Shown here in pieces: positions 4,201-45,731 of a stretch of DNA of 62,721 nucleotides. The translations under genes were made by a program, and so were the position numbers. Numbering within the stretch: position 1 is the first letter of the stretch; every line of letters starts with the position of its first letter. Location of the stretch: contig JBJNIA010000010.1 in the NCBI GenBank assembly GCA_046118255.1, forward strand, positions 62,001 to 124,721. The letters run 5' to 3'. The notes under the pieces were generated by a model. The model had not been told where the DNA came from and ran no database searches. It was given only the letters and a program-made list of their open reading frames with translations. This DNA comes from Sluysia triapertura (taxonomy: Eukaryota).

Positions 4201-5486
4201 TTTCTACGGTGGCTTCAAAAACAGCATATGCTTTTACTAAAAAATATGAAGAAGAAATGAATGAATCATTCACAACATTTAAATTAAATGAATTAGTAAG
4301 TAAGGTAGAAGGAGTAAAAAGAACAACAGGGCAACATCCAGGAGGAATCATTGTTATTCCTAGTAATTATTCAGTTAATGATTTTACACCAATTAATTAT
4401 CCAGCTGACGATATAACTTCAACGTGAAAAACATCTCATTTTGAATATGAAGCATTACATGACAATTTATTAAAGCTAGACTTGCTAGGTCATGTTGATC
4501 CTCAAGCATTAAAAGAATTACAAATATTAACTGGTATCGATCCAAAAACCATTCCTTTTAATGATAAAAGAGTTATGTCTTTATTCACTTCTTATGATGA
4601 ATTAAAACTATCAACTAGCTATAAAAAATCTATATTAAAAAATGGTGCAATCGGGATTCCTGAATTCGGAACAAGCTTTGTTCGCAAAATGTTAGATGAT
4701 ACTCAACCTCAAAGTTTTGCTGATCTTGTCAAAATTTCGGGATTATCACACGGGACTGATGTGTGATCGGGGAATTCTTCTAAGCTAATCAAGGAAGGAA
4801 AGAATTTGAATTCTATAATATGCTGTAGAGATGATATTATGGTTTATTTAATTAGCAAAAAAGTTGATGCTAAAACAGCCTTTAAAATTATGGAAAATGT
4901 TAGAAAAGGTAAAGGACTGTCGAGAGAATGAAAAGATATTATGCTCCAACACGATGTTCCCACTTGATATATTGAATCATGTGAAAAAATTAAATATATG
5001 TTTCCTAAAGCACATGCAACAGCATATGTATTAATGGCGTGAAGAGTAGCTTGATTTAAAATCAATTATCCAATTGAATATTATAGTGTTTATTTCTCGT
5101 TAAGATGTGATAGTTTTGATCCAAAAATTATGTGTAGTTCGATTGAAACTATAATTAATAAAAGGGAAGAATTGTCATCAGCTAAAACACCAAAAGAAAT
5201 TTCTTTAGCATTAACCTTAGATTCAGTAATTGAAATGAAAGCTCGTGGGTATGATTTTAAACAGATAAGCGCTAACGAATCACAAGCCAATACTTTTATT
5301 CCAACAAAAGATAAACGTTCTATAATAATTCCTTTTACAGCGTTAGATGGGATGGGAATTGCTAATGCTGAAGAAATAATCGCCCAAAGAAATATTAAGC
5401 CATTTATTGACATAGAAGACTTTGCATTAAGGAGCAATGTCAATAAAACTCAATTACAAAATTTAAAAGAATTAAATATTATTTAA
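1275..5486 (+). CDS. polC: DNA polymerase III PolC-type alpha subunit
   Basis: PHP domain ([15 protein letters not shown]), exonuclease (FDLETTG), [25 protein letters not shown]; all fragments in one frame with TGA=W. Confidence 0.97.
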
Positions 5487-5504: not shown

Positions 5505-5558
5505 TATAATAAATACATATCATTGTGTAAACAAGGGACAGTTTTATGTCTCTTTTTT
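5505..5558 (+). promoter_or_regulatory. rimP-nusA promoter (-10 TATAAT) and leader terminator/attenuator
   Basis: TATAAT 5505-5510, then hairpin AAGGGACA/TGTCTCTT (5533-5554) with T-run before rimP; same position as the Firmicutes rimP leader. Confidence 0.6.
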
Positions 5559-5578: not shown

Positions 5579-6031
5579 ATGGATTTGATTTTTGTTTTAA
5601 ATAATAAATTTAAATCGGAATTAGAAGAAAAAAATATTCATATATTTTCAACATCATCTATGTATAAAAAAAACGAAACCGACTTATCAATTTTTTTATT
5701 TAAAAAAATAGGTTATATTAACTTAGAAGAGTGTGAATTCTTTTATAAATTATTTAAAAATTTTTTAAGTAACTCTGAAGAATATAAAAATATTAATATA
5801 GTTGAAGTTGCAAGTTGTGGGATTAATACCCTAGTAAAAAATGATTATCAACTAGCTTTAATAAAGGATTTAGTCATTAGTTGTAAACTCATTATTCCAA
5901 TTAATAAATTTTATAAAATCGATGGTAAATTAATAGATTTTAATGAAGAAAAAATTATAATAAAAACGAAAATAAATGATCAAGAAATAATTCTAAGAAA
6001 AAATATCAAGGAAATTAAGGTAAATAAATAG
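5579..6031 (+). CDS. rimP: ribosome maturation factor RimP (divergent)
   Basis: Position before nusA, size 150 aa, VEVASCG resembling LEVSSPG. Confidence 0.75.
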   Translation: MDLIFVLNNKFKSELEEKNIHIFSTSSMYKKNETDLSIFLFKKIGYINLEECEFFYKLFKNFLSNSEEYKNINIVEVASCGINTLVKNDYQLALIKDLVISCKLIIPINKFYKIDGKLIDFNEEKIIIKTKINDQEIILRKNIKEIKVNK

Positions 6032-42175: not shown

Positions 42176-43975
42176 ATGGATATAAAATTTATAAGAAATT
42201 TTTGTATTATCGCTCACATTGACCATGGCAAAAGTACTTTGGCAGACAGAATTTTACAAATTTGTCATGATTGAAAAAGTGTTAAAAACGCTCAATTATT
42301 AGATGATATGGAATTAGAGAAAGAACGCGGTATTACAATCAAATTAAATGCAGTACAACTTAAGTATTTAGATAAAAGAACTAATACTTATTATTTGCTT
42401 CATTTAATTGATACTCCGGGCCATGTAGATTTTAGTTATGAAGTTTCAAGAAGTTTAGCTGCTTGCGAAGGAGCTATTCTTGTTGTAGATGCTAGTCAAG
42501 GTGTGCAAGCCCAAACGATTTCTAATGTTTATTTAGCTTTAGAAAATAATTTAGAAATTATTCCTGTTTTAAATAAGGTTGATTTGCCAGCATCTGAACC
42601 AGAGAAAGTTAAAAAGGAAATAGAAAACATCATTGGTTTAAATTGTGAAAATGCCCCTTTAATTAGTGCAAAAACTGGTTTAAATATTAACAAGGTTTTT
42701 GAGGCCATTATTGATCAAGTTCCTCCACCAACCGGCGATAAAAATAATAAATTACAAGCCTTAATATTTGATAGCTACTATGATAATCATCGTGGTGTCA
42801 TTATTTCTATTTGTGTTAAAGAAGGAAAAATTAAACTAAATGATGAAGTATTTTTAATGAATAGTAAATTTAGTTTTATTGTAAGAGAAGTTTTTATTAA
42901 AGATCCTGAATTAATTAATAAACAACAACTAGAAGCTGGAGAAGTAGGACTAATATCTGGAAATATTAAACAAATTTCAGATATAAATATTGGTGATAGT
43001 ATTACTTTAAAAAGTAACCCTGCAGATCAACCATTAAAAGGTTATAGAAAATTGCAACCAAATGTGTATGCTGGATTATTTCCTATAGACCGAAGCGATT
43101 ATGATAAGTTAAAAGAAGCATTAGAAAAATTGAAATTAAATGATTCAAGTTTACTATACGAACCTGAAGTTTCAGATGCCCTAGGATTTGGTTTTAGATG
43201 TGGGTTTTTAGGATTATTACATGCCGATATCATTCAAGAAAGACTTGAAAGAGAATATAATTTAAACCTAATTACTACATCACCGAATGTTGTATATGAG
43301 GTTATCACAACTAAAAATGAAAAATTAATAATTGATGGACCCAATAAACTTCCACCTATTCAACAAATAAAAGAAATATTCGAACCTTTTACAATAACTA
43401 AGATAATAACACCTAACGAATACATAGGTCCTTTAATGCAATTATGTACAGATGCTAGAGGAATATATAGAGAAATGGTGTATATCGATGATACAAGGCA
43501 AATGTTAGTATTTGAAATTCCATTGCAAGAAATAATTTATGATTTTTTTGATAAATTAAAATCATTATCAAAAGGGTATGCTTCTTTTGAATATGAAATT
43601 ATTGAATATAGACCAAATAAATTAGTTAAAATGGATATTTTATTAAATGGCGAGCAAGTAGATGCATTAAGTATCATCATTCATAAAGATAAGGCTTATT
43701 ATCGCGGTAGAGAAATTTGTGAAAAATTAAAAGATATAATTCCCAAAAAACAGTTTGAAATAGCAATCCAAGCTGCCATAAACCATAAAATAATTGCTCG
43801 TGAAACAATTTCTGCATATAGGAAAAATGTTCTAGCTAAATGTTATGGTGGAGATATTTCTAGAAAGAAAAAGCTTTTAGAAAAACAAAAAGAAGGTAAA
43901 AAACGCATGAAATCTGTAGGAAATGTTGATATTCCACAAGATGCTTTCTTAACAATTTTAAAAACAAATAAATAA
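42176..43975 (+). CDS. lepA: elongation factor 4 (LepA)
   Basis: [42 protein letters not shown]. Confidence 0.98.
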
Positions 43976-44044
43976 AAGTGGACTTATTTCCAAAAATATT
44001 TACAATACAAATGTGATCTTTATAAAAATAAATATAAATATCAC

Positions 44045-44283
44045 AGAAAAGCCATTTTCGTTTCCTTTGTTACATAAGTGAACTCCTTGTTTGTATGTTA
44101 TTATCTATAAATTCTATTAATTCATAATTTTTGTTCATTTTGTTCAAAAATAAATCAATCTATTTAGAAATAATTTAAATAGTTTGTATTAAAGGTTTTA
44201 ATAAATTTTCTCTTTCAATTTCGTTTAATTTGTTTTTTTGGTGGTGGTTTTTTAATGAGGGTCTTTTATGACCCTCATTTTTA
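44045..44283 (+). ncRNA. candidate regulatory small RNA (5' end approximate)
   Basis: 376-bp gap in a gene-dense genome; 5'/3' closing stem, internal hairpins, anti-SD/anti-AUG segments, strong terminator. Confidence 0.5.
44254..44283 (+). terminator. intrinsic terminator
   Basis: AATGAGGGTC-TTTTAT-GACCCTCATT perfect 10-bp stem followed by T-run on the + side only. Confidence 0.85.
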
Positions 44284-44351
44284 TTAATCTCTATAATAAA
44301 AAGCTTCATAATGTAGTAAAATAATAGTATAAAAATGGATTAGGACAAAAT

Positions 44352-45731
44352 ATGGATTATGATTTTTTATTAGGTTCAGTTTATGATAAAAAAGCTTACT
44401 TAACATATACAGAAAATAATTATTTTAGTAAGGAAGAAGTTGCCAAAACCATGGGCGGGCAATCTTCAGAATCAATTTGGTTAAATATTACTAAACATCG
44501 TAGTAAATTATTTAACTATTTGCCCATAAGATCTTTTGTTTCAAGATCTTTAAATGAGAAAAGTAATTTAAAATATTTTTTACCAAGTTGTATTTTAAAA
44601 AAACTTAATAAAGTTAATGAACTAACACAAAGTTTAAACACTTCTATTTTAATAAGAAAAATTATAAGTAATGAGGATAAAAAATTATTTACAGATCTAA
44701 AAAATTTTGATACTCAGTGTTTATATGATGAAATTTCTTCAATAATAGGGTCATATAACTCTTCTATATCTAAAGAAGATTATTTTAATTTAATAAATAA
44801 AAATGATGAAAACTCAGTGTTTTCAAATAAAACTGATAGATTTATATATGGTTTAAACAGAGTTATTGGATCCATGAATATAAATGTTTCCTTTGATAGT
44901 AAATTGATTCAATCATGAAATAAAATCTTATTTGGTAATAGCTTAAGCCCTTTACGAAATAAAAAAGTAGTTAATTCGAATGACAATAGTTCATACGGAT
45001 ATCCATATGATGTTGTATCATCAACATTTGAAGAACTATGTAATTTTATAAATGATAAATATAATTACTTGCCAATAGTTAGATTAGCTGTAGTTTTGTC
45101 TGTTTGTAGATTAGGAATATTATTTGAAAACAAAGTAAATGACATCTTTTCATTATTGTGTTTTTATTATGTTCTAAATCAACATTTCAATATTCTTTTT
45201 CCATGCTTAACAATTGCATCAACAATAATTCAAAATTATAGTGAAAAAATATCTACTTCTTTTAAAAATGTTTTAAAAAATGAAGGAGATATAAACTATA
45301 TTATTAATGTTTTATTAGATATTTTTGATACTAATCTTACTAAACTAGATTATTCATTGAATAATGAATGTTCTTTTAGTAACTATTTTTCATTTAATAA
45401 AAAACATGAAATTAGCAAAGAATCTGACACCAAAAAACAACAATCTACTGCAATTCATAAACACAAAAATCAAATTCAAGAAGCTTTTTACATCTTATTA
45501 AAAAAATATCCTGATATTACTAGAAAACAAGCTTGGTTTTTTGCAAACCACTGTGAACAGGATTTTAATTACACAATTAAGGATTTTGAGGTTTTTAATA
45601 AAAGTTGCCAAGAAACAGCTAGATATAGTTTTGAAAATTTAATTAAAATTGGTTTGTACAAAAAAGTAAAAATAAGTAAAAAATTTGTATATCAAGCACA
45701 AAAAACATTAGATAATATAATAAAAGGATAA
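44352..45731 (+). CDS. degenerate Fic-domain protein with C-terminal winged HTH
   Basis: Fic-like spacing (LR..V...YP...FEELCNFIN...PIVRLA) with the catalytic motif replaced by ILFENKVND; C-terminal TIKDF...ETARYSFENLIKIG. Confidence 0.65.

What the first reader, a model, noticed from the sequence alone, without database searches (positions are those of the whole stretch)
44045..44283. Structured pyrimidine-rich RNA with several anti-SD/anti-AUG seeds
Seen: GCCATTTTCGTTTCCTTT (44051-68) and CATAAGTGAACTCCTT (44073-88) are each the reverse complement of SD + 7 nt + ATG; TTCATAATTTTT (44121-32) is anti-AUG. The 5' AAAAGCCATT can pair with GGTGGTTTTT just before the terminator. Hairpins lie at 44160-82 and 44187-203. 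Established analogy: streptococcal csRNAs carry anti-SD plus anti-AUG sequence. Trans-acting sRNAs are poorly documented in Mollicutes.
Basis: partly seen in the sequence, partly recalled or inferred. Interest (0 to 1): 0.75.

Follow-up and report, generated by a model that had tools for sequence, protein, structure and literature searches.

The report
Candidate small RNA gene after lepA
The 376-base gap after the lepA gene of an undescribed wall-less bacterium living in a flatworm looks like a small non-coding RNA unit carrying two mirror images of ribosome-binding sites, but nothing yet shows that the RNA is made or what it does.

Summary
They lie in the 376-nt spacer between lepA and an orphan 459-aa gene ("X") on a code-4, 25% GC Mollicute contig inside a flatworm assembly. 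A strong + strand intrinsic terminator (44254-44283) is real and rare in this genome. "Structured" is not upheld: without the terminator the body folds no better than shuffles (z about -1.4). The two anti-SD/anti-AUG motifs are beyond chance locally: of three orphan RBS-like sites in all intergenic DNA of the 125-kb contig, two are here. They can equally be read as real or relic ribosome sites on the minus strand. There is no Rfam match, paralogue, coding signal, RNA data or close relative. The two nearest relatives have only 52-66 nt at this site. One uncultured four-species Mollicute family has, at the same lepA-X position, a promoter-to-terminator, U-rich unit of about 255 nt. Its core is 89-98% identical, against 51-65% at lepA third codon positions. 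It has no detectable sequence similarity to the window. Verdict: a plausible lineage-specific sRNA gene or lepA 3'UTR. The anti-RBS mechanism is unproven, and it is not a csRNA.

The parts
42176..43975 (+). lepA (EF4), 599 aa in code 4; the upstream gene whose transcript has no terminator before 44254
   Evidence: (Pfam LepA_C etc. in homologues)
43999..44026 (+). Candidate promoter TTTACA-16 nt-TATAAA, placing the start near 44033. The tool's alternative is TGGACT-16-TACAAT at 43979-44006, placing the start near 44013.
   Evidence: Read. TTTACA is also the -35 of the tRNA promoter in this window and of the relatives' element. Weak: the -10 lacks its final T.
44012..44045 (.). 13-nt-arm palindrome (one mismatch, 8 nt between the arms) overlapping the candidate -10. 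Either a 5' hairpin of the RNA or an operator.
   Evidence: I13; no other copy on the contig
44045..44253 (+). U-rich body of the candidate RNA, with no ORF of note and no family match
44051..44068 (+). Complement of AAAGGAAAC + 4 nt + ATGGC (RBS-like on the minus strand). About half paired with AAAGG at 44193-97 in the fold.
44073..44088 (+). Complement of AAGGAG + 7 nt + ATG. CUCCUU at 44083-88 is predicted unpaired (0.87).
44020..44055 (-). 11-codon ORF (MAFLWYLYLFL in code 4) behind the second minus-strand RBS-like site. The first site's ATG (44075) is followed at once by TAA.
44254..44286 (+). Intrinsic terminator with a 10-bp stem (5 G-C pairs), a 6-nt loop and a T tail. It works on the + strand only.
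   Evidence: the best-scoring terminator row in the window, and one of two window terminator hits that lie between genes
44292..44351 (+). Own promoter region of the downstream gene X: TATAAT at 44292-97 and TAGTA-N6-TAGTA at 44314-29, which resembles the motif before X in L082 and L083

Best explanation
The spacer is a non-coding + strand transcription unit. It would give a U-rich RNA of about 240-270 nt that ends at the intrinsic terminator 44254-44283. The RNA would be made either from a weak promoter just after lepA or as the lepA 3'UTR. It is mostly unstructured and exposes C/U motifs (CUCCUU, UUUCCUUU, each followed by CAU) that could pair with Shine-Dalgarno plus start-codon regions of mRNAs.

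Shown: the terminator, the absence of coding signal, the local excess of RBS complements, and an analogous conserved unit at the same locus in another Mollicute family.

Inferred: that the RNA accumulates, that it has its own promoter, and that it acts by blocking ribosome-binding sites.
For: - Terminator: strong and + strand only. Intergenic terminators are rare on the contig, and the others lie 46-127 nt after a gene end, or right after the small rpmF gene. This one lies 278 nt after lepA.
- No terminator lies between the lepA stop and 44254, so the + strand is very likely transcribed.
- No coding signal: the best frame scores -0.30, against 0.33 +/- 0.11 for genes. There are no Pfam or PHROG hits and no tblastn-type hit in 61 relatives.
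- Two of the three orphan RBS-like sites of the contig lie here, and CUCCUU is unpaired at 0.87.
- About 28% of genes in this organism have a clear SD, so an anti-SD has something to bind.
- Same locus in four MAG species: promoter TTTACw-17-TGkTATAAT, a U-rich unit of about 255 nt, then a terminator 255-280 nt after lepA. Its core is 89-98% identical, against lepA third positions at 51-65% and the post-terminator spacer at 31-61%.
- In other relatives the same flank holds tRNA genes.
Against: - No RNA data exist for this organism.
- The body is not more stable than shuffles.
- The promoter is weak.
- No paralogue in the contig or the assembly. No Rfam family.
- The nearest relatives (LepA 67% identical) have only 52-66 nt at this site.
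- No sequence similarity to the MAG-family element: the nhmmer profile found nothing and pairwise z was 0-1.4.
- The best predicted target (rpsO, -25.9 kcal/mol) equals what shuffled RNAs reach, -25.4 +/- 1.9.
- The motifs read equally well as minus-strand ribosome sites.
Confidence: 0.45

Rival explanations
1. Functionless spacer. The terminator simply ends the lepA transcript. The roughly 280 nt before it are leftover DNA, for example from a decayed minus-strand gene, and the two RBS-like sites are relics of its start.
For: - The minus strand is purine-rich like coding strands.
- Frame -0 has 4 stops, against 8-10 in the other frames, and the best though non-significant coding score.
- The RBS-like sites are canonical for this genome.
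- The contig has 21 spacers of 150 nt or more, so it is not maximally compact.
- The nearest relatives lack the stretch.
Against: - No homologue of any minus-strand piece was found.
- The coding score of -0.30 lies within the range of other spacers.
- A lepA terminator placed beyond a convergent gene's 5' end would be an odd ancestral layout.
- A similar unit at the same site is under strong constraint in another family.
Confidence: 0.3
2. Cis-acting leader or attenuator for the downstream gene X. Read-through of the terminator would be controlled by the upstream RNA fold. One form of this is translation of the 10-codon ORF (ATG at 44255, preceded by GGTGGTGG) that spans the terminator stem.
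For: - The order promoter, RNA, terminator, gene is the classic attenuator layout.
- The GGUGGUGG SD-like site scores -10.6 and is sequestered by the 5'-3' closing helix.
Against: - X has its own TATAAT after the terminator, and the motif before X is shared with relatives that lack the long spacer.
- No riboswitch or T-box hit.
- No antiterminator alternative is apparent.
- The body is not structured.
Confidence: 0.1
3. Real tiny minus-strand genes, with the + strand transcript acting as their cis-antisense regulator in the manner of a type I toxin-antitoxin pair. The candidates are the 11-aa hydrophobic peptide and possibly the 22-25 aa ORF that ends at the ATG-TAA.
For: Canonical SD spacing occurs on the minus strand only. 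ORF-C is hydrophobic. Transcription from lepA would be convergent.
Against: - 11 aa is too short for a membrane helix.
- The first site has ATG followed directly by a stop.
- There is no minus-strand terminator, and only chance-level promoter hexamers.
- No homologues were found.
Confidence: 0.08
4. A diverged copy of a known housekeeping RNA (6S, SRP, RNase P, tmRNA or tRNA).
For: Rfam models can miss very AT-rich symbiont RNAs (general knowledge).
Against: - No Rfam hit is better than E = 0.03, and that one is to a snoRNA.
- ARAGORN finds nothing.
- The fold is multibranched, not rod-like.
- A 6S match above the Rfam cut-off lies elsewhere in the assembly.
- Rfam does detect a tRNA in this window.
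Confidence: 0.02

Closest known systems
csRNAs (CiaR-dependent sRNAs) of Streptococcus (PMC3091779, PMC8186281)
   Same: A small RNA ending in a terminator, with anti-SD and CAU anti-start sequences. At least one of these is predicted to lie in an unpaired stretch.
   Different: - No TTTAAG-N5-TTTAAG CiaR box.
- No Rfam match.
- 240-270 nt rather than roughly 50-200 nt.
- No siblings in the genome.
- The host is a Mollicute, not a streptococcus.
lepA-downstream U-rich unit of an uncultured four-species Mollicute family
   Same: - Same locus, between lepA and the X-like gene.
- Same strand and similar length.
- T-rich, with two UCCU-containing motifs.
- A TTTACA-type -35 box 13-24 nt after the lepA stop.
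- A terminator 255-280 nt after lepA, followed by X's own promoter.
   Different: - No detectable sequence similarity.
- The relatives have a textbook extended -10 box, whereas the window's -10 is poor.
- The relatives' motifs lie mid-RNA and lack the SD-spacer-AUG geometry.
C-rich anti-SD sRNAs of Firmicutes (RoxS/RsaE type) and 3'UTR-derived sRNAs (from general knowledge)
   Same: Exposed pyrimidine motifs that could mask SD sequences. Possible origin from the 3' end of an mRNA, sharing its terminator.
   Different: Those families have CCC(C) motifs in hairpin loops and are conserved across genera. This RNA has U-rich CUCCUU and UUUCCUUU motifs and is an orphan.
Type III toxin-antitoxin and retron layouts (ncRNA, terminator, protein gene; from general knowledge)
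   Same: An RNA unit sits directly upstream of an orphan protein gene. The 5' and 3' ends of the RNA can pair.
   Different: - No tandem repeat array.
- X matches no RT, ToxN or other family.
- X has its own promoter.

Membership tests
csRNA (Streptococcus) | CiaR binding repeat TTTAAG-N5-TTTAAG upstream of the -10 box | tested here: not met
   No TTTAAG in 43920-44050 (read). The feature is defined in PMC8186281.
csRNA (Streptococcus) | [quoted passage not shown] | tested here: inconclusive
   CUCCUU is unpaired at 0.87, but the other motif is about half paired and its CAU is paired (0.01). The fold is multibranched. The feature is defined in PMC3091779.
csRNA (Streptococcus) | Sequence and structure match to the curated family | tested here: not met
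   No Rfam hit at gathering score or at E <= 10.
Independent terminator-bounded sRNA gene | Intrinsic terminator on the RNA's strand | tested here: met
   44254-44279 plus T tail, with a 10-bp stem and 5 G-C pairs.
Independent terminator-bounded sRNA gene | Own promoter | tested here: inconclusive
   TTTACA-16-TATAAA and TGGACT-16-TACAAT are both sub-optimal. Promoter-like hits in the region are not above shuffles.
Independent terminator-bounded sRNA gene | A discrete transcript | not testable with these tools
   No RNA run holds the locus. The only holder, X1, behaves as DNA contigs.
Independent terminator-bounded sRNA gene | No protein-coding capacity | tested here: met
   Coding scores, the ORF list and family scans.
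lepA-downstream unit of the four-species MAG family | Sequence similarity to the conserved core | tested here: not met
   The nhmmer profile of the 4 sequences does not find the spacer in 124.7 kb. Pairwise z is 0-1.4.
lepA-downstream unit of the four-species MAG family | Position and layout (lepA, promoter, U-rich RNA of about 250 nt, terminator, X) | tested here: met
6S RNA | Rod-like fold with a central bubble, and an Rfam RF00013 match | tested here: not met
   No hit here. The fold is multibranched. An RF00013 hit lies on another contig.

The most novel reading that the evidence does not exclude
The lepA 3' flank is a recurrent home for fast-evolving, U-rich riboregulators in Mollicutes. 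On this reading, the window's RNA is the flatworm symbiont's version of the ultra-conserved unit seen in the uncultured MAG family. It would act in trans by masking Shine-Dalgarno plus AUG regions (the best candidate in hand is rpsO). That would be a translation-level regulator in a lineage that has lost most transcription factors.
Probability: 0.15. Interest if true: 0.6.

Novelty: new member of a known kind. Interest (0 to 1): 0.4.

Why it matters
Base-pairing sRNAs are thinly documented in Mollicutes, whose reduced genomes keep few regulators. A verified anti-RBS sRNA in an animal-associated Mollicute would add a regulatory layer to minimal-cell biology. It would also mark the lepA flank as a place to look for more. 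As it stands this is a candidate only. The firmer by-product is the strongly constrained RNA-like unit in the four-species family, for which Rfam has no family.

Tried and rejected
- Rfam at gathering score and at E <= 10: nothing.
- ARAGORN: nothing.
- Paralogues by BLAST in the assembly and by word-7 blastn on the contig: none.
- Homologue in the Biomphalaria mollicute genome: only AT-rich noise.
- Inverted duplication of the X start region: alignment scores no better than shuffles.
- Minus-strand pseudogene: no family or six-frame hit, and the coding score is not significant.
- Target prediction against 114 start regions: indistinguishable from shuffles.
- Reads: no RNA run. The DNA contigs of a near-identical strain show no change in the spacer, but only 5 SNPs occur in 2.9 kb, so this is uninformative.
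- Metagenome pattern scans: none for the window's motif pair, and one chance hit inside tsf for the relatives' motif.
- Palindrome as a repeated operator: no other copy.
- Type III antitoxin-like array: no tandem repeats of that kind.
- X as RT, ToxN or a defence protein: no credible family.
- Not done: a covariance model of the relatives' unit. It has little structure and the profile search was already blank.

Full report
**Context.** The window is a 25% GC contig that reads TGA as Trp. It is contig C10 (124,721 bases) of a 619-Mb animal assembly. Earlier notes of this scan call the animal a flatworm and the bacterium an undescribed Mollicute whose nearest known relative is the Biomphalaria glabrata mollicute. 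My LepA search agrees: the best hits are 67% identical, a JGI metagenome contig and that snail mollicute, followed by Spiroplasma at 63-65%.

The finding lies in the spacer 43976-44351. This sits between lepA (42176-43975) and an orphan 459-aa gene, here called X (44352-45731). X is followed by a 208-aa low-complexity protein and then the radical-SAM gene hemW.

**Observation.** Every quoted string is at its stated coordinates. The + strand intrinsic terminator at 44254-44279 plus its T tail is real. It has a 10-bp stem with 5 G-C pairs, against 0.2 such sites expected in shuffles. Across the window, terminator-like hits lie mostly inside genes. Only two lie between genes, and this one heads the scan's table for its third of the window, with the most G-C pairs of any hit. 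My own scan of the whole contig found a handful more, 46-127 nt after a gene end or right after the small rpmF gene. This terminator lies 278 nt after lepA, with no terminator in between.

The fold of 44045-44283 scores z = -5.1. After removing the terminator, the body 44045-44250 gives z = -1.4 on the + strand and -0.7 on the - strand. "Structured" therefore rests on the terminator hairpin.

The body is T-rich (60% pyrimidine) but not C-rich, and other spacers reach 62%.

**Are the anti-RBS motifs more than chance?** About 28% of genes here have a clear SD, typically AAGGAG or AAGGA 5-8 nt before ATG.
- On both strands of the 124.7-kb contig, AAGGA + 4-10 nt + ATG occurs 49 times. Of these, 21 are gene starts, 25 lie inside genes and 3 are orphans in intergenic DNA.
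- The rate inside genes predicts about 0.08 in this spacer, so the pair is locally unusual. The figure is post hoc, and there are 21 spacers of 150 nt or more on the contig.
- A thermodynamic SD yardstick puts them in the top ten of intergenic non-start ATGs, not at the top.
- The statistic cannot say which strand matters. On the minus strand, the first site is ATG followed immediately by TAA. The second opens an 11-codon hydrophobic ORF.

**What it is not.**
- No Rfam family matches at gathering score or down to E = 10.
- There is no tRNA or tmRNA.
- A 6S match above cut-off lies on another contig of the assembly.
- No second copy exists in the assembly or the contig.
- No frame has coding character. 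The best, frame -0, scores -0.30, against 0.33 +/- 0.11 for genes, which is within the range of other spacers.
- The minus-strand pieces hit no Pfam or PHROG family and nothing in 61 related genomes.
- No CiaR box is present (with the definition).
- No tandem array of the type III antitoxin kind is present.

**Expression.** No public RNA run holds the locus. The one good holder (X1) gives even-depth contigs of a near-identical strain. It has 5 SNPs in lepA and none in the spacer, which is too little divergence to be informative.

**Comparative evidence.** The two nearest relatives keep the order fmt, ECF component, lepA, X-like gene, hemW. Their lepA-X spacers are only 66 and 52 nt, so about 300 nt are extra in the window.

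I then surveyed lepA flanks in 61 Mollicute genomes. Most have short spacers. Some carry tRNA genes there: three tRNAs plus a terminator in L174, and one tRNA in L203.

Four genomes stand out. They make up one whole GTDB family and are known only as metagenome-assembled genomes. Each has a 386-431 nt spacer with the following parts:
- a textbook promoter, TTTACw-17-TGkTATAAT, 13-17 nt after the lepA stop;
- a T-rich unit of about 255 nt;
- a terminator 255-280 nt after lepA;
- the X-like gene behind its own promoter.

The unit's core is 96-98.5% identical among three species and 89-92% with the fourth. By comparison, lepA DNA is 75-85% identical, its third codon positions 51-65%, and the spacer after the terminator 31-61%. 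That is constraint at the nucleotide level.

An ATG-led frame in the unit is 53, 12, 66 and 15 codons long in the four species. Two of these genomes (those checked) are low-coverage long-read assemblies, so homopolymer errors cannot be excluded. Rfam has no family for the unit. Its consensus fold is a 5' hairpin, a small hairpin, a long unpaired U-rich stretch with two UCCU-containing repeats, and the terminator.

The window's spacer therefore shares position, strand, length, composition and layout with a unit that is clearly functional elsewhere. It does not share sequence. A profile of the four sequences does not find the spacer, and pairwise scores equal those of shuffles. Homology is neither shown nor excluded.

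**Mechanism.** My best reading (0.45) is a non-coding + strand RNA ending at 44283, made either from a weak promoter or as the lepA 3'UTR. The candidate promoters are TTTACA-16-TATAAA at 43999-44026 and TGGACT-16-TACAAT at 43979-44006. The second would put the 13-bp palindrome at the RNA's 5' end as a hairpin.

An anti-RBS action is the most natural function for the two motifs, and CUCCUU is predicted free (0.87). It remains inference. Duplex energies to the 114 start regions of the contig are mean -15.7, with the best at -25.9 for rpsO. Shuffled RNAs give mean -15.8 and a best of -25.4 +/- 1.9.

Rival readings:
- Relic spacer plus lepA terminator (0.3).
- Attenuator for X, including a 10-codon ORF with a GGUGG-type SD that spans the terminator (0.1).
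- Real tiny minus-strand genes with cis-antisense control (0.08).
- A missed housekeeping RNA (0.02).

**Verdict.** The "structured" label and the csRNA analogy are not upheld, and the sRNA-gene idea is plausible but unproven. If real, it is a new orphan member of a known kind (base-pairing sRNA). Interest is moderate.

Noticed in passing
L130:2101-2420, L132:2101-2410, L134 (reverse strand) 1106-1491, L135 (reverse strand) 1071-1491: An uncultured four-species Mollicute family has, right after lepA, a unit bounded by a promoter and a terminator. It is U-rich and about 255 nt long. Its 140-nt core is 89-98.5% identical, against 51-65% at lepA third codon positions. Rfam has no family for it, which makes it a strong sRNA-gene candidate in its own right.
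   Followed up: partly
window 44314-44329; L082 about 4870-4890; L083 about 5840-5860: A TAGTA-N5/6-TAGTA direct repeat sits just before the start of gene X in the window and in both nearest relatives (TTAGTATTAAATTAGTAAT in those two). It may be an operator or promoter element of X.
   Followed up: no
window 44331-44362: There is a 15-nt near-duplicate at the start of X (AAAAATGGATTAGGA / AAATATGGATTATGA). The first copy reads ATG GAT TAG, a two-codon false start 17 nt before the real ATG.
   Followed up: no
window 44238-44287: On the + strand, GGTGGTGG (SD-like, -10.6 kcal/mol to the anti-SD yardstick) lies 7 nt before an ATG. That ATG opens a 10-codon ORF running through both arms of the terminator. 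This is a possible translation-sensitive terminator.
   Followed up: partly
L174:110-480 (G046) and L203 (reverse strand, G029): In other Mollicutes the lepA 3' flank carries tRNA genes: three plus a terminator in G046, and one in G029. The site seems to be a recurrent slot for small RNA genes.
   Followed up: partly
G000:C101422:463-644: A 6S RNA match above the Rfam cut-off (49 bits) lies on a small contig of the same assembly. The source organism was not determined.
   Followed up: no
window 44352-45731: Gene X (459 aa, one TGA codon at 44916) has no Pfam, PADLOC or PHROG family. It is only 24-27% identical to its syntenic counterparts in relatives, so it is a fast-evolving orphan kept next to lepA in several Mollicute lineages.
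   Followed up: partly
window 5533-5554 and 44254-44279: The two convincing intergenic terminators of the window share the loop TTTTAT.
   Followed up: no
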